From positions 36,769 to 100,768 of the forward strand of contig ADNK01000461.1 in NCBI GenBank assembly GCA_000320545.1: a DNA stretch of 64,000 nt, given 5' to 3'. Made by a program: the position numbers and the translations under genes. Under the pieces are notes generated by a model. That model saw only the letters and a program-made list of their open reading frames with translations, had not been told where the DNA came from and searched no databases. The DNA is from Bigelowiella natans CCMP2755 (Eukaryota; Protista; Cercozoa). Of this stretch, positions 1 to 64,000 are shown piece after piece (the stretch's first letter is position 1; each line of letters begins with the position of its first letter).

Positions 1-363
1 TTCCGCGAAATATTATAATTTAGTACAATAAAACAGTCCTTTTGCCGATGATCTTTCAGGTGTAAGTACTTGGGAGTGTGTTGCTAAATCAGATTCAGAA
101 TGGTACTGTCATATTTACGCATAAGAAAGGAACTATTTGAGTTAAATAAAATAACCGCAGGTTTCGTTTGGAAAAGGGATTGGATTATCCTTTGAAATTA
201 AACAATATGAGATATTTCTACAGGTTGTATCGTAGGAAACAGTGAACTAGTTTTGGTTGAATTCAGCTCGTGTGCTGAAGACTGCATGGTCACTGTCTTA
301 CGGATGATTGGTCTCAACAAATGCATGCTCGTTGCGTCAAAAATCCTTTTGTTTGGGTGTTGA
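1..363 (+). CDS. 3' end of a spliced gene, product unknown (partial)
   Basis: cag/GT-bounded segments read GVSTWECVAKSDSE and GCIVGNSELVLVEFSSCAEDCMVTVLRMIGLNKCMLVASKILLFGC, ending TGA 361-363. No family recognised. Confidence 0.4.
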
Positions 364-1480
364 CCTTGTGCAACTATCGCCATTTCTTCAAATTGAAACT
401 CACATCTTGAATGCCATGCACACACTTGCATGGCGAGCCTTGTCATTTGCAGCATTCTGGCATTCAGACATCACATTGCTAGATGTCGGGTGGGGCTGAG
501 ATTGGCCGCAATCGCAAGGGCCAGTTGCGCTCTTCAAAATGAACCAATCACATTTTTTTCTGACTGCGTTGGGGTCGCATCATTTTTCGATGAAAATGCA
601 GACGACCATGCTCATTTCCCCTCCACCCACGCCAGCACGTTCGCTCATTGCAGCGCTGGAGTTTGTGTGCGCGCGTGTGCACGCGCTGCTGAGTGAAATC
701 GATGCAGAATCATGCAAGTGATGCGTGAGAGCATCGCAAAAATGCAAGCGTCATCCACAAACCATCAATGCACATGCGTGCTGAGCACAAGCACGCTCAC
801 AGGTGGCGACGGGCGATGATGTGCACGCAGTGCCATGCACAATGCTAGAATGTGACAATTGCGCGCGCACTTTTTGGTCTAGCGCAGCGAATTTTTGTCC
901 AATTTCGGATTTTTTTGCAGATTCAGAACTGTCATGATCAGCGCTTTGAGGAGGTCTAGAGGTGTCAACCATTTCAATCAACAGCCAGTGCACTTGTTTG
1001 AAAAGTGCTCAAGTTTCAAAAAACCCATCAAAATTGCCATACTGGCGTAATTGTGCACCAAAAACAGCTGTTTCTGGGCGTTTTCATGCATGGTCATTGT
1101 GAAATTTGAGCACTTTGTGCGCGCGCGGTGCATTTTTGCAGTTGAATGCGTGTGCGTCCGCCTCGGCACGCAGAGGAATGTGGGGAAAAGAACAGTGCAA
1201 AAACTCCATTGCAAAAACCCACGAAACCTGCCATGTGCGGGGTTTGACCAAGTTGTACGTGTGATGACGATGCGATGTGTTGGCATCACAAGTCTAGAAG
1301 TGCATGATAGTCGACAACAACATCGGCAGTTTCGATCATGCCCTCGTGCGCACAACGCTAGAACGGCATACGATGTGTGAGGAAGATGTGCGTGCTGCGC
1401 TAGAACTGCATACGATGTGTGAGGAAGATGTGCATGACGCACATCACGCAATGCTAGAATGTCATGTGTGTCTCATCATC
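330..1480. other. TpA-depleted, TpG/CpA-rich island 1 (degenerate non-coding or mobile-element relic)
   Basis: Hand count: 15 TpA in 361-1460, 8 of them in CTAG. No TpA at all in 482-845. CpG abundant. Many spurious Cys/His-rich, Tyr-poor ORFs. Confidence 0.9.
1357..1440 (+). repeat. 42-bp tandem duplication, 2 diverged copies
   Basis: gctagaacggcatacgatgtgtgaggaagatgtgcgtgctgc at 1357 and gctagaactgcatacgatgtgtgaggaagatgtgcatgacgc at 1399. Confidence 0.9.
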
Positions 1481-1550: not shown

Positions 1551-2168
1551 TCATTCATCCGCATCAGAACGTATCTGCTCAAGTTTGGTACCCACAATAT
1601 TGAAAAAGGCAGCAATGGAATCTTCCTCAATGCCATTAACAATCCTTTTCCCCACCTTAACCATCGGTTGTGCTACAAAACCCTCTTCAATCTCAACTCC
1701 ATATCCCTGGACCCATTTCCCCCCATATTCATTTATTATGGCTTCTCCAAGGTAAGATCCGAGCATAGACATCATTCTCTCTGCGCTGCCTTCACGAATC
1801 CAAGTTCTTCTGTTTCGGTCTATCAGATCATCGACATAAGCTACAGAGTCCTCGTCGAGTCCGAATTCAAAATTATTCCCTCCAAAAAGGCGCGCCATTT
1901 TATCAATAACGGCCTGGCTGTTCGCTTCAATTTGTTCTTGCACTTCCTCAGGTATATCAGCGGGAGTTTCAGGGGAGCATTTAACGCCAATAGACCTACA
2001 GCACAAGCACTTTGAGCAAACGGGAGCACAGCTGACAGAATCATGTACCTTCTGTGCCCAGTAGAAGAAGTGAGTGGGCGCCAAGAAACTTGTGCAAATT
2101 TTAAGGGACGTGGCAGTGGATGCTTGTGATGTGATACAGCCTAAAATGAACATTGGTATGTGATTTTG

Positions 2169-2250
<82 letters not shown>

Positions 2251-17729: not shown

Positions 17730-19700
17730 TCCATGCACACTAGCGCATGAAAACCATGCAAGTGTGTGATGTGACAGAAAGAATTATTCGAAAATTTACA
17801 CAAGGAGCGAGCACATGAAATCAGAAATCATCGCTTGTGATCACAGCGCCAACAACTTCATTGTCATCATCCAGTGATTGAATGGAGTGTGTTTCTAATG
17901 CGCTTTCACAAATGGTTGATTTTATGTCGCACCTGCGCAGCCTGCAGCCTGTAGCCCTGCATGCTGCATTGCTTCGATCTTGCATGGCGCAACAACGCTG
18001 CAACGATGACATGCATGTGCGAGCTCAGTGCACCAATTTTGGATTTTTGTCAATGCTAGAATGCACTGAACCCACTCGATGATGGGGTTGCCTAGTTGCG
18101 TGTGTGAACAACTGTGCGCCAGTGTGTGCTACGCTTGCGACGCTGTGACACGCACGGCTAGACGGAGCCGCCTGCATTGCACCATTGCACTGTGAATACG
18201 CTTCATCACAGGCTGCAATGTGCGCAGGTGCATGTTTCTAGTCGTGGCTCATGCACATCGATTGCTAGATCGCACTGGATCGTTCGATTCATCTTGTTCT
18301 AGTGTTGTTCGATCGAGCTGCCGCGTGGCAAATCATCACAGCTAGACAGCCGCCAATCTGCTAGTCTGGCCATCGCATCGACTTGCGCTAGTTCGATTGA
18401 CAATGCCAGAATGAGAGCCAGCGCGAGGCCCGGCGGCCGCGCTAGCGCGGTAGCGAGAATCACAAGCAGGAGAATTGTGGAGAGAGAGTTTAGCAACTGT
18501 GGTCGGTCGCGCTGCTCGCCAATTACAGCAACACTGCGTGCTAGCGTGCAGCCTGCATCACTTAGCGCGGTCACACACGCAGCGCCAGCACGAACAAGCA
18601 ATGTGCGCAGCGAGCAAACGTGCAAAACGCGCATGCTGGCACTCTGGCACTGATCAAGAGCACGCTCATTGTTTCAATTTCGATGCAAACCTTGTGATGC
18701 GAATAGCCCAATTTCGATGCTTGACGAATTCATTCACACGCAGGGAGCACAGCCACAGCAGAGCTGGAGGGCCCCAGCTGGCCAGGCTCGGATCAGTGTG
18801 TGCGTTGTGCAACAACATTGAGACACTCAGCGATCACGCTAGCACGCCTCTGTTCTTGAAGAAGACTGACTGGTGCACACCCACCAGGCACAGCCCTGTT
18901 TTTCAGAGCAGATCCGCCAAAACAATGGAGCCATGAAGGCCACACTTGTGCATGCGCGCACGAACGTGTGCAGTCACACACACACACACGTTTTTTCATC
19001 CCACCCTGTGTCCCACAAAGCACACATGTTGGCATGTGTCCTAGACAGGGTGCACGAATGGAGCTACAAAGGCCATGTCAAATCACCTGTTGTGCACTTG
19101 GTGCGCGATCAGCCAGCTGCTCGCTTCCAGACTTTGTTGTTCTAGTGTTGGCCAAGACCCTGCTTTGTGAGACTTCTCGTGCCATCAGATCAGAGCATCA
19201 TGGCATACTTCTTTCTTGTGTTCTTCTCAGAGCACAAACTCAGTTGAACCAATGAATGAAACATCAAAACATTGATTGCGATGAGGGGAGTGGTTCGAAT
19301 TTGAATTGATCTTGGTGAAGACCAGTGCTCCACGCGAGTCGAATCATTTGAAACAATGACGTCAATGGGTGGGCATTTCTGCACACAGATTGAAATGCAA
19401 TGATGAAACATCGCAGGCAATTTTGCTTCTCGTGCATTTAGAAGTAAATCTCAAAAAATACATTTTCAATTTTACGATTGTGCTGAAAAACTGCTGCTTC
19501 CTGGAAGTCTCAAACATATTGGGACATTTTTGTGACAACCACCTCAAAACCCTTACTCTAAAACAAAATGATTAACATTTTACAGATTTGTAGGCTGTTT
19601 CTTGTGAATCATGGCTCATCACCTTGACTCAACAACTAAATCCAATGCTTCTTTTTGATGCACACAACAAACAATTGTTCTGGAACAAAAGAAGATCTTT
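17730..19700. other. TpA-depleted island 2 (possibly an eroded minus-strand gene and/or element relic)
   Basis: Hand count: 24 TpA in 18001-19440, 14 in CTAG, 7 more with TAG on one strand, only 3 with no TAG. CpG abundant. Confidence 0.9.
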
Positions 19701-19773
19701 TCGTGACGAAAGGAAAGCTGTAGAGGAAACTGCACACAACAGAAACACTTGTCTCTGATTTGCTTTTGTGAAG

Positions 19774-21232
19774 ATGGCGAGCGCAGGTTGGCTTGACACG
19801 CATAAAAGATTGATGATTAGGCATTCACAAATACAAATGCTGATGTGCTAATGTGCTAATGTGTTGTGTCGTTGTGTCGTGAGTTTAGCATTGAGTTGTT
19901 CAAACTACGAACACGTTGTACCACAGCATTTCAGACATTAGACAGTTGACATGTTTGATGCGTCCTCAAAAAATGACGCAAAGATTATGTAGGAGGACAG
20001 CAACAGCAACCAAATGAACCAGCGTGCTGCACGAAATGTGTTGATGGTCTCCAAAACATGGATCCAAATGCGCTCACATACATCTTAAAAGTGGTCAACA
20101 TCATCAACGCAGCCCTCCTTGCATTTTCTGGAATATGGGTTTTCATCACCGTAAATCCGAATCTTCTTCTGGTTCTGGCAGCGCTATATGTGATGTAATG
20201 TGAACACAATGTATTCCACTTATTTTGACATGAAAACCTGAATTAGTGCAACTTTGTGCTTTCCATCTGAAACATTGAAACGTTGTGTTCCGGTCCTCCG
20301 TTGTTCCCAGTACATTTAGTTTCGTCCTCCTCATGTTCGAACTGAAGCTGGAGAGTTGCAACAGATGCTTTCTGAGAAATATGGGTTTCATGTTCAATTG
20401 GACTGGGAGGCTCCTATTTTTCATTTTGTACGATTTAAATATTTCAACATGTTCTACTTTCACATGTGAATCACGGCATGTGTTGTTAGCGTTGGAACTC
20501 TTGCCTTTGGTCTGGGCGTCGTCGGGATTGGTATGGAATTTGGGACATAGCACCATGATAAATTTAAATGTTCGTAAATTCTTAGTGGCAGTTTAGAAAA
20601 TATGTTGTGATTTGTGTTCTCTTTCGGCCTCACTTCGCACAATGTTTGGCATTCTCTCTGGTAGTCATCGGTGCTTTCACAATGATCAACGCAGCGATCA
20701 ATGTGGCCATTGTGTGCGTCCATCCAACATTCTTTGCAAATCTACGTGAGAAAGCTGAGGCAGAAGTCAGAGCTGCGGTGGCAAGTGAGGCGGTAGTACC
20801 TGTGAGCGTGAACATCCACAAGATTACAGCAACCACAAGATTACATTCCTGTGATCTCGTCACATTGAACTGTCAAACTTCACCCTTAAGTGCTAGTTTG
20901 GTTACAGAAACGCCAAGGGGTTCTCGATCAAGCAGAGCGAGGGTTGGATTATGCAGCAGCAGCTGGCGTCACAGGCGCACAGCAGACCAAAGAAGCTGTA
21001 GAATGGGCTCAAGAGCAGAAACAGACACCGGGTTCAGCAGCTCTCCCGGCTGGCTGGAGAGAAGTTCGAGATGAGCAATCAGGTACATTCATGAAAATTA
21101 CCACAAGAATAGCAACGCAAACATGAACTAAAATGATCGGCAACTTGCGATTTTTATTCATTATTTACGAGACTGTTAAAAAACTTTTTGCTAAATTGAG
21201 AATGTGACAAAAACAGACACCATTCCACGCAC

Positions 21233-21273
<41 letters not shown>

Positions 21274-21471
21274 AATGTCATTTTCGAATGTGTTTCCATG
21301 TGTTTCTTGTTTGTAAATGCGTGCTGAAGACCATGATATGACTCAGGAAGCCCAAAATTGAAATGTGTGTAATTGTAAGAATTGATTACATGTAAATGTA
21401 AATGTTGCATAGGAGAGGCTTATTGGATCAATTCTGCCACTGGTGAGCAGACCTGGGAACGTCCAACATGA
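19774..21471 (+). CDS. TVP15: COPI-associated / TVP15-like Golgi membrane protein with C-terminal WW domain
   Basis: Spliced TM exons: ILKVVNIINAALLAFSGIWVFI, FVLLMFELK...MGFMFNWTGRLLFFI, VGTLAFGLGVVGI|VIGAFTMINAAINVAIVCVHP. The last two exons join in phase to LPAGWREVRDEQSG|EAYWINSATGEQTWERPT* (WW). First exon (ATG 19774) is tentative. Confidence 0.8.
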
Positions 21472-21719
21472 GGAAGGCGCAATAATGTTCACAATGTACG
21501 AATCAACAGGCATCATTGACAAAGCGCAGCATGCACTATTGCGCTGGCGTTCGCATTTGTTACATGTCAGCGGGACATCACTAATTGTGCAGTTCGTATA
21601 TGCACGTAACAGTTGTGTGTGCAAGTAGAAAGAACTACATCATGACTAGATGACGAGCGCAGAGCGAAGTCATAATAGACTCAGCAATGTAACACACATG
21701 TCATGTGTGTGGTACATTG

Positions 21720-22620
21720 CATGTCCATCATGAGTGCACCTCACTAGATCAGGATGATCATTCTAGCATTGAAAACGTTCAATCCATTCTTCATTGCACC
21801 TGTCTCACGCACGTCACGTGCTTGCGGGAACAATGCGACATCCAGGTGTGGGCTGCACGTGATCTGCGATCTGCACAAATGGGCGAACTAGCGAAACCCG
21901 GGAATTTCACGTGACGGTTTCGCATGTTTCTGTCCGCAAGAATGACTGAAGCAATGCAGCGGCACTGCACGATTTGTGTGCGAAAAAAAATGACACGTTT
22001 TGGCTTGGTTCGAGAAAAAAACTCAATTTTTGAATGTGCTGGAGGTCAGCTTGTCTGGTTGTGACAAATGAATGAGGCCTGAAAAAAAAGCGCAAAATTT
22101 CGAAGTCACTGAACTCAAAATTTCGCAGCTTTCTCATTTTCGTCATGCCTGGTGCTCTGTCTGCTGTCCATCAGGATGGTCATGTGCTCAAGCGTGGTGT
22201 TTTCAAATTCACTTTTTGATCATGCGTGGCCGCACTAGATTGCACCGAAAATGAGAGAATTTTCTGCCTTTTTTTGCCCTCCTAGAATTTTTGCGCATTT
22301 CGCCTACTTGCACATCTAGACATGTGTGCAATCCGCATTTGCGCATCATGCATCACACCAAGCTTCACATTCGCATGCGAGATGGGTGATGACAGCATGA
22401 CAACGTAACGTGCACATTGAGGTGCACATCATTTCAACTTCGCCATGTGTGGTAGCTCAGCGCAAGATTGACACTGCTGATGCACATGACGTGAAATGAA
22501 TTAGCGAGATTACATCTGTCGTGCATGCATGTGAAATTGTATGTGCAGTGTGCAAGTAGTTCATTTTGAAAAACTGACTATGCTAGCATTCATCATTCAT
22601 GCATCAACAACTTCATGCAG
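21720..22620. other. TpA-depleted island 3 (element-like non-coding relic)
   Basis: Hand count: 9 TpA in 21721-22500, 6 in CTAG. No TpA in 21891-22235 despite many A and T runs. Confidence 0.9.
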
Positions 22621-30187: not shown

Positions 30188-31444
30188 ATGGGAAACCAAC
30201 AATTGGGCCCTAAAGCAGTCCGAAGGGCTCCTACGGTGTGATCATTCTCCTAACTGTAAATCGGTGAATCATTATATCTCGTGCATGTCTTTGCTTAAGA
30301 CGAGTGCTATGCTAATATTGGATGTGTATTAGGACATTGAAGTCGCACTGTTAGAAGACCTTCAGCGGAGAGCAATGAGCAGCGTCACAGACCCACAAAA
30401 CAAGCCCATTGTGACGGTGTGTGCAGCAGCAGCAGCAGCAGCAGCAGCATGTTCTTCTTCTTCTCTGCCATCTCTCACCGACTCAAGTTTTAATCTCCCA
30501 TCGCTTCTTTCTTTTCTTGTTCCTCCTCTCCTCCTCCTTCAGGACCTTCTCAAAAGGTTTTGGAATGCAGTGCAAGGGGAAAAGAAGGAGTTTATCCCGA
30601 AGGTGGGTGGATATAGTTGATGATGATGGTGATGATGATGAAGAAGAAGAAGATGATTTTAACAAATGATCCTCCGGGAAAATATGATGATTGTGCCATT
30701 GTTATCGCTTAGGGAAAAGAATGGCAAGGAATGGGCTTCCAAGGTTGCCAACAAGCAACAACTACATCCATCCATCCTCGACTTAACTTCTCGCCACCAT
30801 AACGATGAGCTTCAATCTCATCTTTCTATTTTTTTGGGTATATGAGATATTATTTAACACCTTTTTACAGGCGAAGATCCGTTAACCGATTTTAGAGCAG
30901 GAGGTCTTCTCGCTCTCGAGAATATAGTATTTTTCGTGGAAAAGTACACGGATCTAGCCACAAACATGATCGAACGAAGGTACTTATACTACTGCTACTA
31001 GATATCTTGCTACTATTCTTATTGATCTCTCATTCCTTCTCTCATTCCTCCCCGTATAAAGAAACTGGAATGTGGTGTGAAAATGGTGTTTGATTCTTAT
31101 ATGTGTGGATTGATTAATTGATTATAGGGAGATGAAATTATCCGATGATGGCAGCTTCATGCAGGTGACTGACTGCTCCACTATAAGTTTCGTCGTCATT
31201 CCATCCTTGAATGATTCAGTTGTTGTTCATTATATGATGCTGCTTTGATCGATCATCATCATTTTCATCAGAATCTATATTGTTGGTAATCAGCAGTTTG
31301 TGTAGTAAATATTTTATCATTAACCATCATCAGAATTATCCTTGGTCAGCGGCTGGTGTAAATGTCACGCACACTGCCATGGCACTTTTCGGCCTCTCGG
31401 CAAAGGTGTCGTACCTAGACACACGCACGCACACGCACACATAC

Positions 31445-33798: not shown

Positions 33799-34683
33799 CA
33801 CAACTAAACAGAAACAAAAAGCAATGGCGAGAACGACAAGGGTACTGCTAATAAAGGGGGGGTTGATATGTCACCATCACACTACTAGTGGTTTTAGTAC
33901 TAGCACTTGTGCTAAATACTATTTACATCCATCGTCATCAAAATCTTCGTTGTACTATGATAGATCCTCTATACTTCTACTACTGCTACTACTGCTACTA
34001 ATAAGAGCCAGGCGATAAACCGAGTAAGACAATGGTAAAGCATCTTTTTGCAGTGCATAAGGTAATAATAGTACATCATCAACATAATAATAATAATAAT
34101 AATAATAATAATATTGATAACACAAATAAGTAGCACCACCACAAGCAGTATCAGCCATAAATAGCTGTTTGATCATGATCACCATTAGCCTTCCCTCTCT
34201 CCTACCTACTACCTCTGCGGCCGACCTATTTTCTCTTCTTCTTGTTATATATAATATCTAATAGCGCATTGTGGATGGATGTGAGCTCCTAAGAGTGGCT
34301 GAGGAGAAGCTTGCAAGTGGTGGAAACAAGGTTAGTACTCTCGTCGTAGTACAAGTAGCAGTCACCACCTTGGTTGTCAACTATCGGGCTTCTTTTCCAT
34401 AATTATAATATAATACGAAATCACCTTGGTTGTCAACTATCGGGCTTCTTTTCCATAATTATAATATAATACGAAATCACCTTGGTTGTCAACTATCGGG
34501 CTTCTTTTCCATAATTAATTACATAATATTGGTCGCCGGCATCGAAAACCTTGATGGAGGAGGAGGAGGAGATCACGACGTTGAACAAAAATCCGTATCT
34601 CTCTCTCTCTCTTCAACACACACACATACACATACACATACAAACCATCACATGGTAATTGCAAAACTGAATGCCGTCTCTCG

Positions 34684-43265: not shown

Positions 43266-43448
43266 AACAAATAACAGAACGACCTACCATCAGCACCAGC
43301 ACGAAGAGGAGGCCATGAAATATGATAATGTGCACACGCTCACGACGGCGCCATGAACATCCTCGGGAAGAGAAGAAGCTCAGGGGCGGTGGCAATTTGA
43401 TGGAATTCATTTGGGTATCATCGAGTCCATGATGATGATGATGATGAT

Positions 43449-43530
43449 GAAGAAGAAGAAGAAGAAGAAGAAGAAGAAGAAGAAGAAGAAGAAGAAGAAG
43501 AAGAAGAAGAAGAAGAAGAAGAAGAAGAAG
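43449..43530 (+). repeat. (GAA)~27 polypurine tract between divergent genes
   Basis: Read directly. Confidence 0.95.
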
Positions 43531-43974
43531 ACCTGCTCCTCCTCCTCTGGGCTGCTGTTTCTACTTTCAGGATGTCATGCATGCACGTGGATAAATTAGC
43601 CTAAATTAGATCATTATTTAGGCTAAAGAGATCCAATTTATTATTGAAATTTTAAATCCCTATTTCCCTGTTGTCTTCTTAAATGTATTAGTGATAATTT
43701 TTATAATCACCATTTATATCCACATAATAACTGAATAAAAGGTTCTGTTTTTGAGGGAATCAAACACACGGCTGATCAACCTCTGCCTCCTCCCCGTCTG
43801 CACCACGGCAACATCACCGCTCATCTAGTTGCATAGGGGGACGCATAGGTAATATTACCCTCATTTTAGCTGATCGATCTGGCTACTGTTGACGTAAGAG
43901 GGAGGCATCATATTCAGCGTCTATCCTCAACGTCACGGATAAGCTGGGAAGAGTGCTGCTGCTGCTGCTGCAAG

Positions 43975-44076: not shown

Positions 44077-45637
44077 TGTAGTAGTAATAGTAGTAATGGA
44101 ATGATGGATGGGGAGTCACCAGCATTTGGCACTCTATGTATATTTTTGCCACTTAACTCTTCATCCTCCCGTCCCTCGTGCCCCTCCCGCCCCCCCCTTT
44201 CGTGCAGCTCGGAGACACCGAGATGAACGATGTGTGCATAGCGATACTTGATCCGAAGGGGTCTTTCTGCTCTAAGGAGCTCGATCTTCCTCATCAAAGG
44301 CTGCTGCCACCATGTACTTGGATTACTCCTATCGTTGAGGTAGTACTCCGAAGAAGGAGCCAAAAAATGATTAAGAGGGGGTTATTCAGAGCATTCTCAA
44401 GCAGCGCGGAAACGAGCGCGTGCGCACTCACACACACGCACGCACACACACACACACGCATGCACACACGCATGCACACACGCATACACTACACGCGATC
44501 AAGCTTACGTATGAGCATCATGATTCAAACATATATAGGGCGTTTTGGAGTTCGTTCGGATAGGAACCAAGACATGCCCGAGCAATTGCCGTTTCACATT
44601 CCATATGCACATAAACAACGGTTATGAGAGCGTAGGAAGGACTCTACGAATTAATGAGGAAGGGGTAACCGCAAGCAACCATGTGCTGCACCTGCAACAT
44701 AGTATATGAGGATGATAATGTTTTAAGGGACACAATAATACAAATTTGTTCAGCTACTACGACCCATAGTATCTTCTCTCTCCTTTATGATTTATCGCCG
44801 ATCTTTGTTCGATCTTATTCCTAACATCCATCATCCTTCAGGGCGTTGCGGCGCTTGAAAACTTTCTGTGCAACGAATTTCGGAAAATAAACAAATCGGC
44901 AGAAAAAAAAGGCGGGGGGGGAGGAGAAGGGGGAGGGGGAGGTACAGCATACGAATTTTATGCGACGGTGGTGAAGAAACTCTTCCAAGGATCAAAACTG
45001 AGGAAAATTAGCAGTGAAAGTAGTAATCGAATTAGTAGTACAACTAGTGGCAATAATACGAGGCCAGCAGTAAGCTCCTGCATTGTTGGGTCATGGGAAG
45101 TAAAGCGAAGGGTTATTATCATCTGCCCAGAAAAACATAATGATGATGATGATGATGATGACTCCAAGAAGGTGATTTCAGATAGACGATATCATTATCA
45201 TCATCATCATCATCATCATAATCATCATCATCATCATCGCTACTACTACTACTACTACTACTACTACTATATGTGGTGGTTATCATCGTGTCAGAAGAAA
45301 TCCACATTGCTTCACGTACTACTACTACTTCTCCTTCTTCTTCTTCTTCTTCTTCCTCTTTCGCTTCTTCTTAAGGGACGACTATTTATTCAGCTGATTG
45401 CTGCTTGTCACCATACATGATGCTTACTTCTCAGGACCTTGCTGAGGCCCTAAAAGACTTGGCTAACGAAAATGATTTGGAAATTCTGAGGGCGGGGGAG
45501 AGAATTCAAGTGGAAGTTGTTCGAGTCGTTGATACTATTCGTGATGTATCCTGCAGACAAGATGTGCCTATCATCATATCGCCGTCAAATCTAACGTGAT
45601 TATAGCACACCACGTCCACACACACACACACACACAC

Positions 45638-52300: not shown

Positions 52301-52342
<42 letters not shown>

Positions 52343-52570
52343 AGTACCATGGCTAGTCTAGTAGTATCGCATGGCTGCAACGAATACCACCTGCTAGCAT
52401 AACAGTCCCATGCACAAAATGTTACACATGTTCAGTATGAAGCACACACTAGCGCATTTGTTCTATTAGTGATGCTGTGTTTAGTGATGGCATTGCATGC
52501 TTGGATGTCGTCAGCTTTGTCATCTCAAAAATCATAGTGCGAAGTGCATCAGGTAAACTAGCTTATAAGC
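51990..52570. other. CTAG-rich intergenic tract
   Basis: About 13 CTAG in ~570 bp between convergent 3' ends. Confidence 0.72.
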
Positions 52571-52714: not shown

Positions 52715-54852
52715 TTATTTGTCTGTTGATGCTGCTGCTGCTGCTGCTGAGGGACCAAAAGTTTCGCTGAACACGTTTTCTTTATATTTCTCACTCAAGC
52801 CTTCACTGAGCATACGCATAAAGCCTTTTGGACCGCAAACATAAAAATGCGCTTTCTTACCACTTTCGATGCGTTTCTCTTGGAGCAGTTTCTGCAGCCC
52901 AGTAGGTACAAGGCGGCCAAAGCCGACAGTTTCTCCCTCCACCCTCTTGTAAGAGAATCTTCCGGAAGACGACAACAAGCCATCACTTTCATTTGACGAT
53001 GATGGCAATATCTTAGAGAACTGGGTATGTTGATGCACCTGCCCTCCAGCTCCACGGTATCTTGTAACCAACTCCTTAGCTTCCTTGTGCAGTGTGTGAG
53101 GGAGGTCCTCAGGTGTGCGTGAGCCGTATACCCATAGCACTCTCGGCATTGATTTCGATATCATTGTCTTTGATTCTGCTTTCACCACGAGGTCGCTGAG
53201 GATGGCAAGAACAGGAGTAATTCCTATCCCTGCTGAAATAAACACTATGTCATTAGGTGACTCTGCCATGCGAGTGTTATGATCGGAGACGAAGTGCTGA
53301 AGAACGAAGTGACCCTGCGGCTCTCTCGCCTGAATGATGCTTCCTTCCTTCACCTCGTCATGGAAGTAGGCTGATACCTTTCCCTTGGGGATTATACGCT
53401 TGATTGTTAGGCGATAATGATGCTCAGACGATCCGCTGATAGTGTATGTGCGATCAAGAGGCTTCTCGTTCGCACCTCGAGAATATGCATGGCTGGATGG
53501 GTTGACAAAGATTGGGAGGTACTGCCCCGGGATGACTGCAGGGAGAGGACGGCTCTTCTTTGAAGACGATCCCTCGCTAGTTGAACCCCCTTCCTTTCTT
53601 GCCTCCTTGTGCTTCGCATCACTTTCATTTTGGGATGATGGTGAGAGTGCCGCACGAATAAGGAAAAACGATTTGACGTCCTTTGATTCTTCAACTACTT
53701 TCGCTACTTGGAGATCGATGTAGTCGTGGCGTGGAAGCCATGACACAGATAATGCATCAGATCGTTCCACGATTTTCTTAACTTCAAATACAACCCAATT
53801 GAAAGATTCGGGGTAGCGCGCGGTTTCTTTGCTTATGGCAGATTTTTGAAGAGAAGATATTTTCTTCCGATCTTCTGCATCATCCGCCCACAAGATCTTT
53901 CCATTCCCTATCATTTGCAGCACTTTGCCACTTTGGAAATCCCCAAACCATAATCCTAACTTTCCATTCTCCTGTACGTTACTTAGAGATTTGAGCATCT
54001 GGTTACCAGGGAAATCCGGCCACATAATTGTGGAATTGTTAACGACTCTTACGAAGCCAGCAGGACCTCCTCGATGAGATGCGTCTACACCCGTCCGAGG
54101 ATGACCAGTGCCCATGAACATAGTTGTCGCGGAGCTCATCATATTTCGATGATCTTGCGAGAAGGTTGAGGAGACTGATGTCACCTTGGCCTCTCTGCGC
54201 TGATCCTGTGGTCGATAGTGCCATGTGCGTTCTGTGATATACTGAGGGCAGTTTCCGAACGAAACTATTGGGCTTGAGATCTGGATGTGCCCCGATTTCG
54301 AAACACCAACCACTCCATTTAATCTGTTTCGTCTTCGCGTGTGCATCTCTATTCCCAGCATGCCAATTGGGCGATGAGCCTTTATGTTCTTCCACACTGG
54401 ATCCCCGTGAGTAGCCAACTAGTGGATGAAAGAGGAAAACAAGATTAATGTGATGATGACGACTGGCTGTTGCTACCACTCAAGAAGAAGAAAAGATTCA
54501 AGCTCACCTCATCAATCCCTGTGAATGTCACATCGTTCGGAGTTGCAACCATCAACTGTCTCCCTGGCTTTGCTGTTGTGACGGAGGCCCAAATCTCTCC
54601 ATTGTCATCGATCGTGGCTAGCACCGTGAACGGGAGTTTGTTGTAGAACTCCTCATGCTGTTTTGGAATGAATGATCGGAAATAATGGGCATTCTCATCC
54701 TCTTTCTTTCCATAGTACCGCATCTGCATTTGGTAGGTAGTCTGGTGGAATACCCCCATCTTCTTGTGCACAAATTCTCCGAGTTTGTCCTTCCCTTTAC
54801 CTGGGTCGCTACTCGATGTTGTCTTCTTTGCAAGCGTTTCCATCGTTTCCAT
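52715..54852 (-). CDS. Pyridoxamine 5'-phosphate oxidase-like (tandem FMN-binding split barrel) fused to ferredoxin-NADP+ reductase-type FAD/NAD-binding module
   Basis: FIPKQHEEFYNKLPF..ATIDDNGEIWAS, GMLGIEMHTRRRNRLNG, SFGNCPQYI, VDASHRGGPAGFV...PDFPGN, then RTYTIS, FISAGIGITPVLAIL, YVCGPKGFM, SETFGP. One 89-nt GT-AG intron (54507-54419). An extra 5' exon cannot be excluded. Confidence 0.88.
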
Positions 54853-58700: not shown

Positions 58701-59109
58701 CTGCATGTAACTTCGAAGAGATATTTCCTTACATTTGTTCCGTGAATGAGAACGAATCTGCAAGGAATGTAACGATAGGTGAAGCACAACTGCGCTGACA
58801 CGTGCACCGCATGCATATATGTGCGGGTATGCATAGCGGGTGTATGGTCACAGGCCTAGCGCGTCTCGGCAAAAATCTGAAACATCATAATTGTGTTCTC
58901 CAGGCGCTTCATATTCTCATCCGTGTATGAATCAGCTTGTACCATGTCAAACGCCAACTAACAAGTAGTAGAGAGATGAATGAGTGAGGTAGTTTCACAC
59001 AACAGCTCTGTGTTTGTCGGTCATATCTCTTGCCGGCGAAAAATGATTGAGTGAGCGGAATATGGCATCTCTTTCTGATGCCAACTATGTAGAGTCAACA
59101 TCGGTGTGT

Positions 59110-59147
<38 letters not shown>

Positions 59148-59479
59148 GTGCGCGCGTTTTATGTGTGTTGTTGTGTCTGCAGCCTCATAACACGGCGCAT
59201 GAATACATCGAAGGTAACGTACAGAAAATGGCTCAATCAATTTATTCGAAATGCCATTTAGCATGCCCAGCACCGATAGTTTTTGGTAAACTTCCTGTTA
59301 TAATCAATCATTGTTTTGCTATTCTTAACAACATAAATTAATATGCTATCAATCTACAAATACTCTTACTTTCTCTCTCTTTCTTTCTCTTTGTATCCTT
59401 AACCCCCTATATCATTAACCACATAATACACTATGCACACATCCATAGCTCCATCAATTGTGTGTGCGTTTGTGTGTCC

Positions 59480-59896
59480 TATACCGCCGCTATTTCCAAA
59501 ATCCCATTTGGAGTTGTCTCGAAGTTAAGAAGATACTGACTCTGCAACAGAAAACATTTATTCGCAAACACACCAATACACACACGCACGCACACACACA
59601 CACACACATGAAATGAATCAAAAAATGCAGGATAAAAAGCAGTACCAACACGTTCCCACGATTACATACAACCCCCGATGATGTTTGATGTGATAAACAC
59701 AAGCGTTTTTTTGCAGACAATATTTTAGGTATAGCCTTGAATGTAAGTATGAGGGACTACCTGATCTCGTACGTTCAATGCAGCAGCATCAAGAAGAATC
59801 CCCCCCATCATCACGTCATAAGAGAGCAGCTGTGGGGCGAAGAAACCGTGCTTCTCATGGCTATTTGAATATCATTCGGATGGAAGATATTATTTT

Positions 59897-59937
<41 letters not shown>

Positions 59938-60006
59938 TAGAGTGTTTATGCGTGTACGTACGTCGGTGAGTGTGTGTCTTTTCTGTGCGTGTATTATTCG
60001 TAAATA

Positions 60007-60043
<37 letters not shown>

Positions 60044-61383
60044 CACGATGATGATGACGAAGAGCATGGGTGCTTGTTACTACTTACAGATTCTGCATTG
60101 TCCTCGATACTTGAAACAAAGTAAATCCAATCTCTCTCAGGATGTATTCGGCCCAACATGACAACGAAACTGCTGGCAGTGGATGTGCTATAACATCTCC
60201 TCCTCCTCCTCCTTCTTTTCCTCCTTCTAGAGGTAAAGCTCCGTAGGCGTTGTCCAACTCTCTCCCCAGGATTCTCCCCCCCCCTGCTACCATATTTTCC
60301 TGGATGGCACTATCATCTCTGCATTTGACGTTGTTGTTGTTGTTGGTGTTGTTGCGAGGGCCGTAGCGAGCAATATCCTTTGTAACGATTTTGCTCCAAT
60401 TCCAAAAGAGAGCGGAGAAGGGCGACGAGCAACAAAGGAGGGAGGAGAAAGAGGACGAGGGTGATGATGCTCCTTGCTCCGACACATTCTCTTTTCTTTT
60501 CCTTCTTCCTCTCTCTCTTACGAAGAGAGTAGTGCTGTTTGACGAATTAAGAAGGCGCTCTTGGTAGAGGTTCTCCGGGTGAAAGAGCAAGAATGGATAT
60601 CTGCAGGGAAGGGGGAGAAGGAGGAGGAGGAGGAGGGATGTGTAGTGGTGATGACAATGATATAGCGAAGAACGACATGAGTAACGATGATGATGACGAG
60701 CAATGATGGCGGTTGAGAGGTGAGGTATACTACTGTTTGTTGCAGTTATACATAGCAGAAAAGCAGAATGATCTAAGAGTAGTTGAGTCAATTCAGAGAT
60801 TCTTTTCCTTTGAAGAGATCATCCATAGTAAACATCTTAACCCTCATCGATGTTCTCAATCAAACCGCATCGTCGTTGTTTATAGAGCTATTACATTCCG
60901 GATTATCATTCATTATCATTATTAGTTCCATCGCAACATACTGTGAGCTCTGTTCATCCGGAAATTCAGCCGCCGCATGGCGGACAGCCCTTCGCAATAT
61001 ATCAAGGCTCTGGGAGGAGGAGGAGTGGGAAAACGAAGAACAATTACTTCATATCGGTGAAGAATCGTCTTTTTCCCAGGGGGTGATGGGGTGGTGGCGT
61101 CATATGTAGCATACGCTATTTGTGCACAGAATTTTCTCAAATCTGTCCTCTACAACTTTCTTGTAACTCAAGCCCACAACAAAAGAAGATAAGGAACATA
61201 GCGCAACAAGCAACCAACCTCTTCAATGAACTGTGCTAAGGAAATGGAGGGCACAACTCTTTCAACGAAGCACGGCCAGCCATTGTAGCTGCTCAATCGT
61301 CCATATCTGCAGTATGAAATGTGTGTGTGTGTGTGTGTGTGATGTTCCATCGTTCAATGGCATATTAGTAATGTATATTACAC

Positions 61384-61440
<57 letters not shown>

Positions 61441-61720
61441 AGGCGGGGGGCAGGAAGAATACGAAAGAGGAGCAGAAGAAGAAGAAGAAGAAGAAGAAGA
61501 AGAAGAAGAAGAAAAAGGGGGAAGAAGAAGAACCAAAGTTGCTATAGTAGCAGTGCAGCATACCTCTGATCAAGGCTCACAAATCCTCCTCCTCCTCCTC
61601 CTCCTTCTCCTTCTCCACCACCTCCTATCTTCCTCAAAAAGGCATGTTCCATGTCACGCATCATCCACAGAAGGTCAGAGATATGCCTACAAGTAGTAAA
61701 CAAAGGCAATGGCTGCTTAC

Positions 61721-61758
<38 letters not shown>

Positions 61759-62538
61759 ATGTTGCTGCTGTTCTTAAATAAGCATTCATGATGGATTAGA
61801 CGTGTCTCTCTGATACAACCAATGATGTTTTTCTTGCTTCATCATCATCATCATCATCATCATCGTATAGTCCTACTTGTCATATTCCCTGTTCTCGATA
61901 AAGACTTTGATAGCCACCTGGCATATGAGGAGGGGGGGGAGAGGGGAGGAGGAAGAGGAATAAGGAAGTCAATAGATCTTCTAAAAATAATTACACATAG
62001 TTTTGATTTCTGAGCATCGAATTGACTAGGAGTCATGTCACACTAGTTTTCATTGCACGCACGCCACACAATGTATATATAAATATGTAATGTTTTAGAA
62101 ACCGTCTCATCCGAGGTGTTATCACGGGCCTGAATAATGACTTTATGGGGGCCAACACCCAAGAGTCTTTCAAAGATCAGAAATCGTTGCTGTTCTGCTT
62201 CCCTTTCCCCCACTAACCCCCTCCTTCTTCTCCTTTTTGCTCCTGCTCTATTCATATCTTCTTCCACGCTTTCAGGCACCATACCCGTCGATCTATTATG
62301 CTTGTTATGCTTATCTCCTTCTCCTCCTCCTTCGGTACTACCACCACCACCACCACTACTACTACTGCACCCCCCCCCAAGCTGGGGGTTTGTAGAAGGA
62401 ACATACGAAACAGGGATGGGAGGGAACTGGCCACCACTTATTCCGATGTCAAAGAGCTTCCTCATGCGGTGGTAGAATCGAACAAATGGCCTGCAGTACG
62501 TGCACAATAAGTAGCAAAGGTAAGAGCAGCAGTGGTAA

Positions 62539-62571
<33 letters not shown>

Positions 62572-63027
62572 CTGCCTGGGAGGGGATAAGGGTGTTGCTG
62601 ATTGGTTGCGAGGTGTATGCGCGAGAGAATTGATATGCTGCTGGAATATGCAAGAAAAGAATTATACGCAAGCAATAAGACGATAGGAGGGAATTATCAT
62701 ATGCTGCATATACCACTATTACAGATATTGTACATTATAACATGTTACATCATATTATTACCTTGGGTTGCTGACGTCGATGCGTGCCCCCCTCCCGTTG
62801 ATGCCGCTGCGTCGCCGAATTCGGTATAAATAGGAGGTGAAAGGGCTGCTGCTGCTGCTGCTGCTGCAACGGTGGAGGGCAGGATCTAACGTTGTTTTAC
62901 CATCGCCAGCCTGGCCTTTTGCCTAAAATGAATATGATGATGATGATGATGATGATGATGATGGTGATGATAATAGTGAAATGAGAAGACTCATCAAGTC
63001 AATGAATTTCACGTAGAACACGCACAC

Positions 63028-63067
<40 letters not shown>

Positions 63068-63865
63068 AGCATCATATTCGTAACATCATCATCCCACCTC
63101 ATCGTTCTCATGATTACGTTGGAGCAGGAACAAGGGCGATACGTCCTGCGTGCTTCGATCGAAATGGAATAGTACTACAGCCGTGTTTGAAAAAGGGGGG
63201 GGGGAGGAGAAAAGGAGAAGACGGACAACAAGAAGGACAACAAGATTTATAGGAAGAAGAAATGTAAGAAAATAAATGCTAGCAGATGTAAGTTTGGAAA
63301 CATAGATTTTACTACTACTTTGACTACTCTCTGTCGCTCAATCTACCATCTAACAACACCAGCAGGTATGGAAACCTCCTACCGGATTCCAAACGCGATT
63401 CAGCTGCATTGTGAGGAGAAAGAGAGGTCCTTATATCCCTGTCTACTTCAAAGGCGTCGAGGAAGTGTGAAACAAACCACGTGCTTCTTCTTCTTCTTCT
63501 GCTACTCCTCAAAGAAGAAGAAGAAGAAGTAGAAGAAGTAGAAGAAGGACCCGCTCCGATATGTGTCTTTGTAATGGATGTAAGTATGAAAAATAATCAT
63601 AAACATATTTTTATACACAAGTACAAGCACAAGCACAAGCATACACCAGCAACAAATATATATATTGCAGCATCTCTTACAGCCCCTCCTCCCTCCAATA
63701 CCAATGTCCCCTTTTACTCTACCTTTTCTTCCCTTGTTGGTCCCCCTCCTCCTCCTCCTCCTCCACTTCCATCCAGATGCTCATCAGCATTATCATCACC
63801 ATGATCTTCCTCAAGATGTGTCAGTATAGCGTTTGCTGTTACATCGCCCAAAACGGGACCCACCT

Positions 63866-63897
<32 letters not shown>

Positions 63898-64000
63898 TCA
63901 AGAATAACAATGATGATGATAATAATTATAATAGTAATAAGTATGTTCTAAGAAATCTGAAGTGCTGATTTGTCCCTCTCCCCCTTCCTCTCTCTCTCTC
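59480..64000 (-). CDS. Multi-exon hypothetical gene, 5' end outside the window
   Basis: Minus-strand exons bounded by GT/AG, e.g. TWFVSHFLDAFEVDRDIRTSLSPHNAAESRLESGRRFPYLLVLLDGR, PFVRFYHRMRKLFDIGISGGQFPPIP, CWAEYILREIGFTLFQ, ILLDAAALNVRDQ. Product not identified. Confidence 0.5.

What the first reader, a model, noticed from the sequence alone, without database searches (positions are those of the whole stretch)
17730..19700. Candidate undescribed genome-defence mutator: reverse-RIP (TpA to TpG/CpA) hypermutation island
Seen: core 18001-19440 has 24 TpA in 1440 bp. The three island cores together have 48 in ~3320 bp (~1.4%), against roughly 6-7% expected from base composition (my estimate). 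TpG/CpA are in great excess and CpG is retained. Six-frame ORFs here are Tyr-poor, Cys/His-rich and overlap heavily, as expected if TAY becomes TGY/CAY and TAA/TAG stops are erased. Edges are gradual over a few hundred bp. Established: fungal RIP and 5mC deamination drive C to T and create TpA, the opposite. I know no described eukaryotic process with this polarity and context. Inference: targeted adenine deamination (TadA/ADAT-like or via 6mA) or a mutagenic thymine modification (5hmU-type) acts on silenced or repeated loci. Sequence alone cannot separate A>G from T>C.
Basis: partly seen in the sequence, partly recalled or inferred. Interest (0 to 1): 0.92.

Follow-up and report, generated by a model that had tools for sequence, protein, structure and literature searches.

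The report
TpA-erased hypermutation footprint, Bigelowiella natans
The island is real and looks like the scar of a mutation process that turns TA into TG or CA, but a 2026 preprint already showed this process experimentally in the same alga, so this is one more example and not a new discovery.

Summary
Window 18001-19440 has 24 TpA where base composition predicts 83. Three cores (249-1358, 17798-19440, 21800-22500) hold 45 TpA in 3454 bp. TpG and CpA are about 1.7x expected and CpG is kept.

The window is Bigelowiella natans nuclear DNA (Bigna1 scaffold_7). A 2026 bioRxiv preprint (10.64898/2026.01.13.699255) showed in mutation-accumulation lines of this species a mutator that makes almost only A>G/T>C changes at TpA. 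It also scanned the genome for the same low-TpA, high-CpA+TpG 1-kb windows.

New here:
- The footprint is one 4.7-kb domain (17798-22501). It encloses a conserved, spliced host gene that is itself partly hit.
- Against an 86%-identical homologous contig of normal composition, TA>TG/CA outnumbers the reverse 30 to 9. Every other transition class is symmetric.
- Half of the surviving TpA are CTAG, and TAG contexts are under-represented in the preprint's own mutation table.
- I found no viral, transposon or repeat signature.
- The cores' surplus of CpG/GCGC and CTAG is unexplained.

The parts
17798..22501 (.). Whole TpA-depleted, CpA/TpG-enriched domain (4.7 kb)
   Evidence: Maximal low-TpA segment: 129 TpA in 4704 bp. 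[quoted passage not shown]
17798..19440 (.).
   Evidence: 27 TpA in 1643 bp, 14 of them CTAG. GC 0.52, rho TA 0.28, rho TG+CA 1.70. ORFs have no Pfam, PHROG or protein homologues. The left edge is sharp, within 100 bp.
19735..21503 (+). Conserved spliced host gene (membrane domain like COPI_assoc plus C-terminal WW). Approximate coding exons: 19995-20195, 20315-20428, 20491-20545, 20650-20790, 20890-21083, 21412-21468
   Evidence: tblastn of the Partenskyella glossopodia orthologue P0125 recovers the exons. L001 aligns to 19735-19789, 19982-21083 and 21411-21503. Exons have TpA 2.2% (rho 0.34) and introns rho 0.55; TG+CA rho is 1.41-1.73. Six other ORFs in the window have rho TA 0.59-0.91 and TG+CA rho 1.02-1.20.
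21800..22500 (.). Core 3: near-saturated DNA downstream of the host gene
   Evidence: 7 TpA in 701 bp, 4 of them CTAG. Rho TA 0.14.
249..1358 (.). Core 1: separate island downstream of the intronless 200-aa gene at 1551-2153 (-)
   Evidence: 11 TpA in 1110 bp, 5 of them CTAG. The neighbouring gene matches P0130 at 100%.
18056..18545 (.). Cluster of surviving CTAG sites
   Evidence: 11 CTAG within 18050-18550, where 1.5 are expected from the window background (Poisson P=6e-7).
18051..18063 (+). Copy of the 13-mer CAATGCTAGAATG. Other exact copies are at 840-852 (+), 1449-1461 (+) and 21759-21771 (-). CCAG variants are at 453-465 (-) and 18401-18413 (+)
   Evidence: All 4 exact copies lie in TpA-depleted DNA. 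There are 11 matches at <=2 mismatches against 2.7 expected, and 0 of 100 shuffles reach 11.
664..686 (.). Alternating pyrimidine-purine tract that mixes TG, CA and CG (a second one is at 18947-18962). Possible fossil of a (TA)n/(TG)n microsatellite
   Evidence: The tract is a perfect alternation of purines and pyrimidines but has mixed base identity. Most background tracts of this kind are pure (TA)n, (CA)n or (TG)n. Only two examples, so anecdotal.

Best explanation
The island is a fossil footprint of the TpA-directed A:T>G:C hypermutation that operates in the Bigelowiella natans nucleus.

Proposed mechanism. Within a bounded 4.7-kb chromosomal domain (and a separate 1.1-kb one at 249-1358), TpA dinucleotides were converted one at a time, on either strand, to TpG or CpA. 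Non-coding flanks ran almost to completion. The conserved host gene in the middle kept the TpA sites that selection protects and took hits mostly at synonymous positions.

Context. The process prefers TAH. TAG is hit about 0.35-0.5x as often, so the palindrome CTAG, which reads TAG on both strands, is the main survivor.

Shown versus inferred. The composition, the context hierarchy, the asymmetry against a homologue and the published mutation spectrum are shown. Adenine deamination by an ADAT2/TadA-like enzyme (the preprint's candidate is Bn78255) and episodic, domain-wide targeting are inferred. What marks the domain is unknown.
For: 1. Organism. ORF 52715-54418 is jgi|Bigna1|86045, model estExt_fgenesh1_pg.C_70322.

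2. Published experiment in this species. 230 of 231 mutations in two hypermutable regions are A>G/T>C. The authors report all but a handful at TpA and about 1000x the normal rate. They also made a genome-wide scan of low-TpA/high-CpA+TpG 1-kb windows. The island's windows pass those thresholds.

3. Transition-only budget. Total pyrimidine-purine steps are 0.280 in the cores and 0.248 +/- 0.022 in the background. TA falls from 0.073 to 0.013, while TG+CA rises from 0.142 to 0.212.

4. Simulation. Applying TA>TG/CA to the window's own background raises the tetramer-spectrum correlation with the cores from r=0.29 to 0.77 and reproduces GC of about 0.48-0.50.

5. Polarity test. L001 is an 86%-identical homologue with normal composition (TpA 6.1%). 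TA(L001)>CA/TG(window) occurs 30 times against 9 in reverse (p=0.001). All seven other transition classes are symmetric, and non-TpA transitions are 28 vs 31. Only 23 of 68 aligned L001 TpA remain TpA in the window.

6. Exon hits. 10 of 14 are synonymous.

7. Context hierarchy among survivors. DTAH is at 0.057x background, CTAH/DTAG at 0.146x and CTAG at 2.2x. My hand tally of the preprint's Table S2 gives TAA 71, TAC 56, TAG 23 and TAT 76. TAG is 10% of hits against about 20% of TpA contexts in the window background.

8. Strands. TG equals CA, with no strand-coordinated runs.
Against: - The cores themselves could not be polarised, because I found no homologue of the intergenic DNA.
- L001 has no outgroup. 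Whether it is an orthologue or a diverged paralogue is unresolved.
- The simulation reaches r=0.77, below the sampling ceiling of 0.915 +/- 0.027.
- A strict TpA mutator does not predict the surplus of CpG, CGC and GCGC (CG 0.056 vs 0.033) or of CTAG (23 seen, at most about 10 expected even with full immunity).
- No TpA mutation was recorded on scaffold_7 in 3132 generations. By my own arithmetic from the preprint's numbers, about 3-5 would be expected if the roughly 140 remaining TpA mutated at the viral-region rate.
- No foreign origin is visible, unlike the preprint's validated targets.
Confidence: 0.8

Rival explanations
1. The cores are old insertions of foreign or mobile DNA, such as giant-virus, virophage or transposon remnants. 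Either they arrived already TpA-poor, or they were the true targets and mutation spilled over into the host gene between them.
For: The preprint's validated targets are viral, and its low-TpA gene models are enriched for transposase and reverse-transcriptase domains. The cores share short motifs found almost nowhere else in the window. Their tetramer spectrum is not fully reproduced from host background. They also lack the microsatellites that are common elsewhere.
Against: No Pfam, PHROG or protein homologue for any core ORF. No similarity between cores and no terminal inverted repeats, even when transitions are scored as matches. The purine/pyrimidine skeleton is within the host range. An intrinsically TpA-poor donor would not explain why the native gene between the cores shows the same directional change.
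Confidence: 0.12
2. TpA is avoided by selection, not removed by mutation. Examples would be avoidance of TATA-like or AT-rich elements in regulatory DNA, or of UpA in transcripts.
For: UpA/TpA under-representation in expressed sequence is widespread (PMC3829696, seen). The islands lie next to gene ends. CTAG and a 13-mer motif are retained, as functional sites would be.
Against: Depletion is strongest in the non-coding cores (rho 0.14-0.28) and is strand-symmetric. It is matched by a gain in TG/CA at a constant pyrimidine-purine total. Other intergenic DNA in the same window is TpA-normal. The species has a measured mutator with exactly this signature.
Confidence: 0.05
3. A general GC-enriching process, such as GC-biased gene conversion or a recombination hotspot, produced a GC-rich island.
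For: GC is 0.47-0.54 in the cores against about 0.41 around them. CpG and GCGC are enriched.
Against: AA, TT and AT odds ratios are unchanged or higher (1.07-1.20), and CC/GG fall to 0.55-0.59. The gain is therefore context-specific and not a general AT>GC shift. Against L001, only the TpA class is asymmetric.
Confidence: 0.03

Closest known systems
TpA-specific hypermutation of integrated viral DNA in Bigelowiella natans (Mettrop et al., bioRxiv 10.64898/2026.01.13.699255, 2026)
   Same: Same organism, same dinucleotide target, same products (TpG/CpA) and both strands. The compositional signature is the same, and the island's 1-kb windows pass that paper's thresholds.
   Different: This locus has no viral or transposon signature and encloses a conserved host gene. 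No de novo hit was recorded on its scaffold. At most two consecutive 1-kb windows qualify, so it may fall short of the paper's three-window 'cluster' rule. The CTAG/TAG context effect and the CpG surplus are not discussed in the paper.
[quoted passage not shown]
   Same: Domain-wise, dinucleotide-context transition hypermutation that leaves compositional islands with erased coding capacity.
   Different: RIP needs duplicated sequence and a sexual cycle. No duplication was detected here.
A-to-I mRNA editing by ADAT2/ADAT3 (TAD2/TAD3) in filamentous ascomycetes
   Same: An ADAT-family adenosine deaminase with a strong requirement for U (T) at position -1 (PMC11156358 abstract). This matches the TpA rule and the preprint's ADAT2-like candidate.
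   Different: It acts on RNA hairpin loops, not DNA. UAG and UAA stop codons are frequently edited there, whereas TAG is the disfavoured context here. It leaves no heritable footprint.
APOBEC3 and ADAR hypermutation of viruses and retroelements in animals
   Same: Deaminase-driven, context-dependent clustered transitions used against foreign nucleic acid.
   Different: APOBEC makes C>U on single-stranded DNA with strand-coordinated clusters, and no strand coordination is seen here. ADAR acts on double-stranded RNA. The comparison of neighbour preferences rests on my own knowledge and was not tested.

Membership tests
B. natans TpA hypermutation footprint (Mettrop et al. 2026) | Sequence is from the B. 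natans nuclear genome | tested here: met
   ORF 52715-54418 is 100% identical to a cluster that contains jgi|Bigna1|86045, model estExt_fgenesh1_pg.C_70322. B. natans transcript contigs match at 99.8%.
B. natans TpA hypermutation footprint (Mettrop et al. 2026) | [quoted passage not shown] | tested here: met
   Met by windows starting at 1-801, 17801-19501 and 21101-21901.
B. natans TpA hypermutation footprint (Mettrop et al. 2026) | At least three consecutive qualifying 1-kb windows (the paper's 'cluster' definition) | tested here: inconclusive
   At most two non-overlapping windows fit within 17801-20500. The result depends on window phase in scaffold coordinates. The paper's Table S10 was truncated in the held copy.
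B. natans TpA hypermutation footprint (Mettrop et al. 2026) | Directional A:T>G:C change confined to TpA | tested here: met
   For 19735-21503 against L001: TA>CA/TG 30 vs 9 in reverse (p=0.001), with the other classes symmetric. The cores have no homologue and were not testable.
B. natans TpA hypermutation footprint (Mettrop et al. 2026) | Both strands affected (A>G and T>C in similar numbers) | tested here: met
   TG 366 vs CA 364 in the cores. The neighbour-run test gives z of about 0.
B. natans TpA hypermutation footprint (Mettrop et al. 2026) | Elevated de novo mutation rate at the locus in mutation-accumulation lines | tested here: inconclusive
   The paper's Table S2 lists one scaffold_7 mutation (A>T at 216274) and none at TpA. 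About 3-5 would be expected at the viral-region rate (my arithmetic). The window's scaffold coordinates and callability are unknown.
B. natans TpA hypermutation footprint (Mettrop et al. 2026) | Target of viral, transposon or other foreign origin | tested here: not met
   No Pfam, PHROG or protein homologue in the cores. The enclosed gene has a chlorarachniophyte orthologue and spliceosomal introns.
Fungal RIP | C:G>T:A transitions that raise TpA and lower CpA/TpG | tested here: not met
   The opposite is seen: TpA rho 0.21 and CpA/TpG rho about 1.7.
Fungal RIP | Target is duplicated sequence | tested here: not met
   No duplicate within the window in normal or purine/pyrimidine space. Genome-wide duplication could not be tested.
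GC-biased gene conversion / generic GC island | AT>GC shift in all dinucleotide contexts | tested here: not met
   AA, TT and AT rho are 1.07-1.20, and CC/GG 0.55-0.59. Only the TpA class is asymmetric against L001.
ADAT2/TadA-type adenine deamination | T (U) immediately 5' of the deaminated A | tested here: met
   The loss is specific to TpA. This fits the family but does not prove it, because T>C chemistry on the other strand gives the same footprint.
ADAT2/TadA-type adenine deamination | An identified deaminase acting on DNA at these sites | not testable with these tools
   The preprint's candidate Bn78255 is not in this window, and no biochemistry is available.

The most novel reading that the evidence does not exclude
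The mutator is not confined to foreign DNA. It swept a native 4.7-kb domain that includes a conserved, still intact host gene. It reads a three-base context (TAH), so CTAG palindromes are effectively immune. The CTAG-centred 13-mer CAATGCTAGAATG, found only in the depleted DNA, could then be a cis element tied to targeting or protection. If so, the process shapes host gene and promoter evolution as well as defence, and the context rule gives a direct biochemical test for the responsible enzyme.
Probability: 0.3. Interest if true: 0.65.

Novelty: already known. Interest (0 to 1): 0.4.

Why it matters
A heritable TpA>TpG/CpA DNA mutator in a eukaryote is remarkable, but it was reported in 2026 for this species, so the finding confirms it and does not discover it. 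This locus adds three useful details:

- The footprint can cover native DNA and a conserved host gene. That bears on whether the system is purely anti-viral.
- TAG, and above all CTAG, is refractory. This is a testable specificity for the candidate deaminase.
- Saturated islands carry extra CpG that a strict TpA rule does not predict. This hints at a slower second step or at unusual ancestral sequence.

Tried and rejected
- Rfam and tRNA scans of the window found nothing.
- blastn of the islands against the window gave only microsatellite hits.
- The same search with purines and pyrimidines collapsed, so that independently mutated repeat copies would still match, gave only alternating microsatellites.
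- Long terminal inverted repeats were suggested by nested short inverted pairs. Local alignment scores fell within shuffled controls, with or without tolerance for transitions, so I rejected them.
- Pfam and PHROG scans of core ORFs gave nothing credible.
- A protein search with the longest core ORF gave no hit, not even to a gene model of the genome itself.
- Exact-product look-ups of two genomic ORFs found nothing on record.
- The first metagenome scan with the 155-aa ORF failed, because its patterns came from intronic read-through. The second, with an exon alignment, returned only a 51%-identical locus (L002), too distant for DNA polarity.
- I looked for a sister-lineage transcript of the gene next to core 1 to polarise that core. 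Only 52-63% relatives exist.
- The 3' tail of L001 could not be aligned towards core 3.
- A test for strand-coordinated runs of TG vs CA found none.
- The fossil-microsatellite argument rests on two tracts, too few to count as evidence.
- The preprint's cluster table (S10) is truncated in the held copy, so I could not check whether this island is listed.

Full report
**1. The observation**

The window is 42% G+C and overall mildly TpA-poor, with an odds ratio of 0.81. Positions 18001-19440 contain exactly 24 TpA in 1440 bp, where base composition predicts 82.9.

A log-odds segmentation finds two strong low-TpA segments. One is 249-1358 (11 TpA in 1110 bp). The other is a broad 17798-22501 segment (129 in 4704 bp) with near-empty cores at 17798-19440 (27 in 1643 bp) and 21800-22500 (7 in 701 bp). 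In the three cores:

| Dinucleotide | Cores | Rest of window |
|---|---|---|
| TA | 0.21 | 0.85 |
| CA | 1.72 | 1.15 |
| TG | 1.66 | 1.19 |
| CG | 0.90 | 0.77 |
| GC | 1.55 | 1.05 |
| CC/GG | 0.55-0.59 | about 0.92 |

The six-frame translation is Tyr-poor (0.08x) and rich in Cys, His and Ala. TAA stops have almost vanished: 4 TAA, 34 TAG and 62 TGA.

The affected domain extends to about 22500. Several edges are sharp (within 100 bp), not gradual.

**2. Where the window comes from**

ORF 52715-54418 is 100% identical to a protein cluster that contains jgi|Bigna1|86045, model estExt_fgenesh1_pg.C_70322. Its next relatives are other chlorarachniophytes. Bigelowiella natans transcript contigs match the window at 99.8%. 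The window is therefore B. natans nuclear DNA, and the model name points to scaffold_7.

**3. The process is already described in this species**

A literature search found bioRxiv 10.64898/2026.01.13.699255 (Mettrop et al., version of April 2026). Its main results are these:

- In 15 mutation-accumulation lines of B. natans, 231 of 302 nuclear single-base mutations fell in two integrated viral regions. These mutate at about 6e-7 per site per generation.
- 230 of the 231 are A>G or T>C, and the authors report all but a handful at TpA (their table flags one; by my reading four more T>C sit at ATG or ATT).
- The authors cut the genome into 1-kb windows and took Rho_TpA<=0.43 together with Rho_CpA+TpG>=1.52 as the long-term signature. 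They found 124 clusters of at least three such windows.
- They proposed an ADAT2-like adenine deaminase, Bn78255.

Windows starting at 17801-19501 and 21101-21901 (and 1-801) of the present sequence pass those thresholds. At most two consecutive windows fit, so the island may or may not be one of the 124 clusters. The relevant supplementary table is truncated in the held copy.

**4. Anatomy of the locus**

The two cores flank a real gene on the + strand. tblastn with a Partenskyella glossopodia protein (P0125, MMETSP1318) recovers six coding exons between 19995 and 21468. They encode a membrane domain resembling COPI_assoc and a C-terminal WW domain split by an intron. This is a native, conserved, spliced chlorarachniophyte gene.

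The gene is itself marked. Its exons have TpA 2.2% (rho 0.34) and its introns rho 0.55, with TG+CA rho 1.41-1.73. Six other ORFs in the window have TpA rho 0.59-0.91 and TG+CA rho 1.02-1.20.

The cores are intergenic. Their ORFs have no Pfam, PHROG or protein homologues. There is no Rfam or tRNA hit. The islands are not copies of one another in ordinary sequence space, nor after collapsing purines and pyrimidines, which a transition-only mutator leaves unchanged.

**5. Is it mutation, and in which direction?**

Three lines of evidence point the same way.

- *Transition budget.* The total frequency of pyrimidine-purine steps (TA+TG+CA+CG) is 0.280 in the cores and 0.248 +/- 0.022 in background 1-kb windows. 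Within that total, TA drops from 0.073 to 0.013 and TG+CA rises from 0.142 to 0.212. Transitions alone would do this.
- *Simulation.* Applying TA>TG/CA to the window's own background until TpA reaches the core level raises the tetramer-spectrum correlation with the real cores from r=0.29 to 0.75-0.77. It also brings G+C to 0.475-0.50, against 0.497 observed. The fit stays below the sampling ceiling of 0.915 +/- 0.027.
- *Comparison with a homologue.* A 1301-bp contig, L001 (JGI sample 3300017007), aligns to 19735-19789, 19982-21083 and 21411-21503. Over 1169 aligned bases it is 85.9% identical, and 231 of 251 codons encode the same residue (92%). Its composition is normal, with TpA 6.1% and rho 0.74.

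Only 23 of the 68 aligned TpA in L001 are still TpA in the window. Thirty are CA or TG. Strand-folded, TA>CA/TG occurs 30 times against 9 in reverse (binomial p=0.001). All seven other single-transition classes are symmetric, and non-TpA transitions run 28 vs 31. In exons, 10 of 14 such changes are synonymous.

L001 was found in a single sample that is not one of the four B. natans samples carrying the control gene. It is most simply a sister-species orthologue, but a diverged paralogue is not excluded. There is no outgroup. The argument therefore rests on the context-specific asymmetry and on L001 having the normal composition.

**6. Context beyond the dinucleotide**

Of the 45 TpA left in the cores, 23 are CTAG. 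Relative to background density, the classes fall as follows:

| Context class | Density relative to background |
|---|---|
| DTAH | 0.057x |
| CTAH or DTAG | 0.146x |
| CTAG | 2.2x |

If each strand acts independently, the first two values imply a TAG rate of about 0.35 times the TAH rate.

I tallied the trinucleotide column of the preprint's Table S2 by hand. Folded onto one strand, the 226 TpA hits are TAA 71, TAC 56, TAG 23 and TAT 76. TAG makes up 10% of hits but about 20% of TpA contexts in this window's background. I could not normalise by the context content of the viral regions themselves.

The same bias explains why GpC doubles while CC and GG do not rise. The preprint does not mention any context beyond TpA.

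TG and CA are equal and randomly interleaved, so the hits were independent and not strand-coordinated.

**7. What the model does not explain**

- *CTAG surplus.* Even with complete TAG immunity, a background-like ancestor would leave about 10 CTAG. There are 23 (P=5e-4), and 11 of them lie within 500 bp at 18050-18550 (P=6e-7).
- *CpG, CGC and GCGC surplus.* CG is 0.056 against 0.033, and CGC is 3.4x. A strict TpA rule cannot create CpG. A slower second step from CpA/TpG to CpG is possible, since Table S2 lists three T>C at ATG among 211. The gene region shows no such asymmetry against L001 (7 vs 8).
- *Shared short motifs.* The cores share CAATGCTAGAATG (4 exact copies, plus two CCAG variants), CTACTTGCACA and CACTTGCATG. 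These could be remnants of a common element or functional sites.
- *The domain boundary.* Nothing here shows what delimits the domain.

**8. Activity now**

The following is my own arithmetic from the preprint's numbers. There are 210 TpA hits over about 5984 callable TpA and 3132 generations. That gives about 1.1e-5 per TpA per generation, or a TpA half-life of roughly 6e4 generations.

At that rate the roughly 140 TpA left in the two domains should have yielded 3-5 hits. The table lists none on scaffold_7. The many TpA that persist in the gene's introns also argue against continuous exposure. The domain therefore looks like a fossil of one or more past episodes. This is an inference, and it depends on the region having been callable.

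**9. Verdict**

It is no longer undescribed, and the locus gives no support for a repeat or foreign target. The most likely reading (about 0.8) is a footprint of the known B. natans TpA mutator on native DNA.

The main rival (about 0.12) is that the cores are unrecognisable old insertions that attracted the process. Selection against TpA and generic GC enrichment are unlikely.

Novelty: already known, with incremental new detail. Interest: 0.4.

Noticed in passing
window 1-64000, densest at 29000-52000 and 59000-64000: Very high density of pure di- and trinucleotide microsatellites: 110 Tandem Repeats Finder rows, many at 100% match. The three TpA-depleted cores contain none.
   Followed up: partly
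window 2171-2250: Compound microsatellite (CT)15(TA)16(GA)n lying just beyond the start end of ORF 1551-2153 (-).
   Followed up: no
window 34366-34517: Perfect 56-bp tandem repeat, 2.7 copies at 100% identity.
   Followed up: no
window 52715-54418 (-): Gene fusing a pyridoxamine-phosphate-oxidase-like domain to a ferredoxin-reductase-type NAD-binding domain. Apart from chlorarachniophytes and Diplonema, its relatives are almost all bacterial, which suggests an old bacterial acquisition.
   Followed up: no
window 19790-19981 and 21084-21410 versus L001: L001 lacks these two B. natans introns but is collinear through four others. It is either a partly spliced transcript or the two lineages differ in intron content.
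   Followed up: no
window 44429-44489, 52303-52343, 59104-59157, 63018-63066: (CA)n/(GT)n microsatellites outside the islands carry interspersed CG or end in (GC)n. Transitions from CpA/TpG to CpG in alternating tracts may therefore be common genome-wide.
   Followed up: no
window 30353-30592, 43327-43591, 54051-54712: Three weaker low-TpA segments. The second is mostly a (GAA)n array and the third overlaps coding sequence. They are probably unrelated to the hypermutation signature.
   Followed up: no
Supplementary Tables S6 and S8 of bioRxiv 10.64898/2026.01.13.699255: Two adjacent scaffold_7 gene models, aug1.7_g3611 and aug1.7_g3612 (jgi|Bigna1|128903 and 128904), appear in the preprint's low-TpA gene tables. 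Their numbering is near gene 322 of scaffold 7, so they may lie in or near this window. I could not verify this.
   Followed up: partly
Supplementary Table S2 of the same preprint: Within TAG-type contexts the reference-strand counts are lopsided: 3 A>G at TAG against 17 T>C at CTA in the giant-virus region. Gene orientation may explain it.
   Followed up: no
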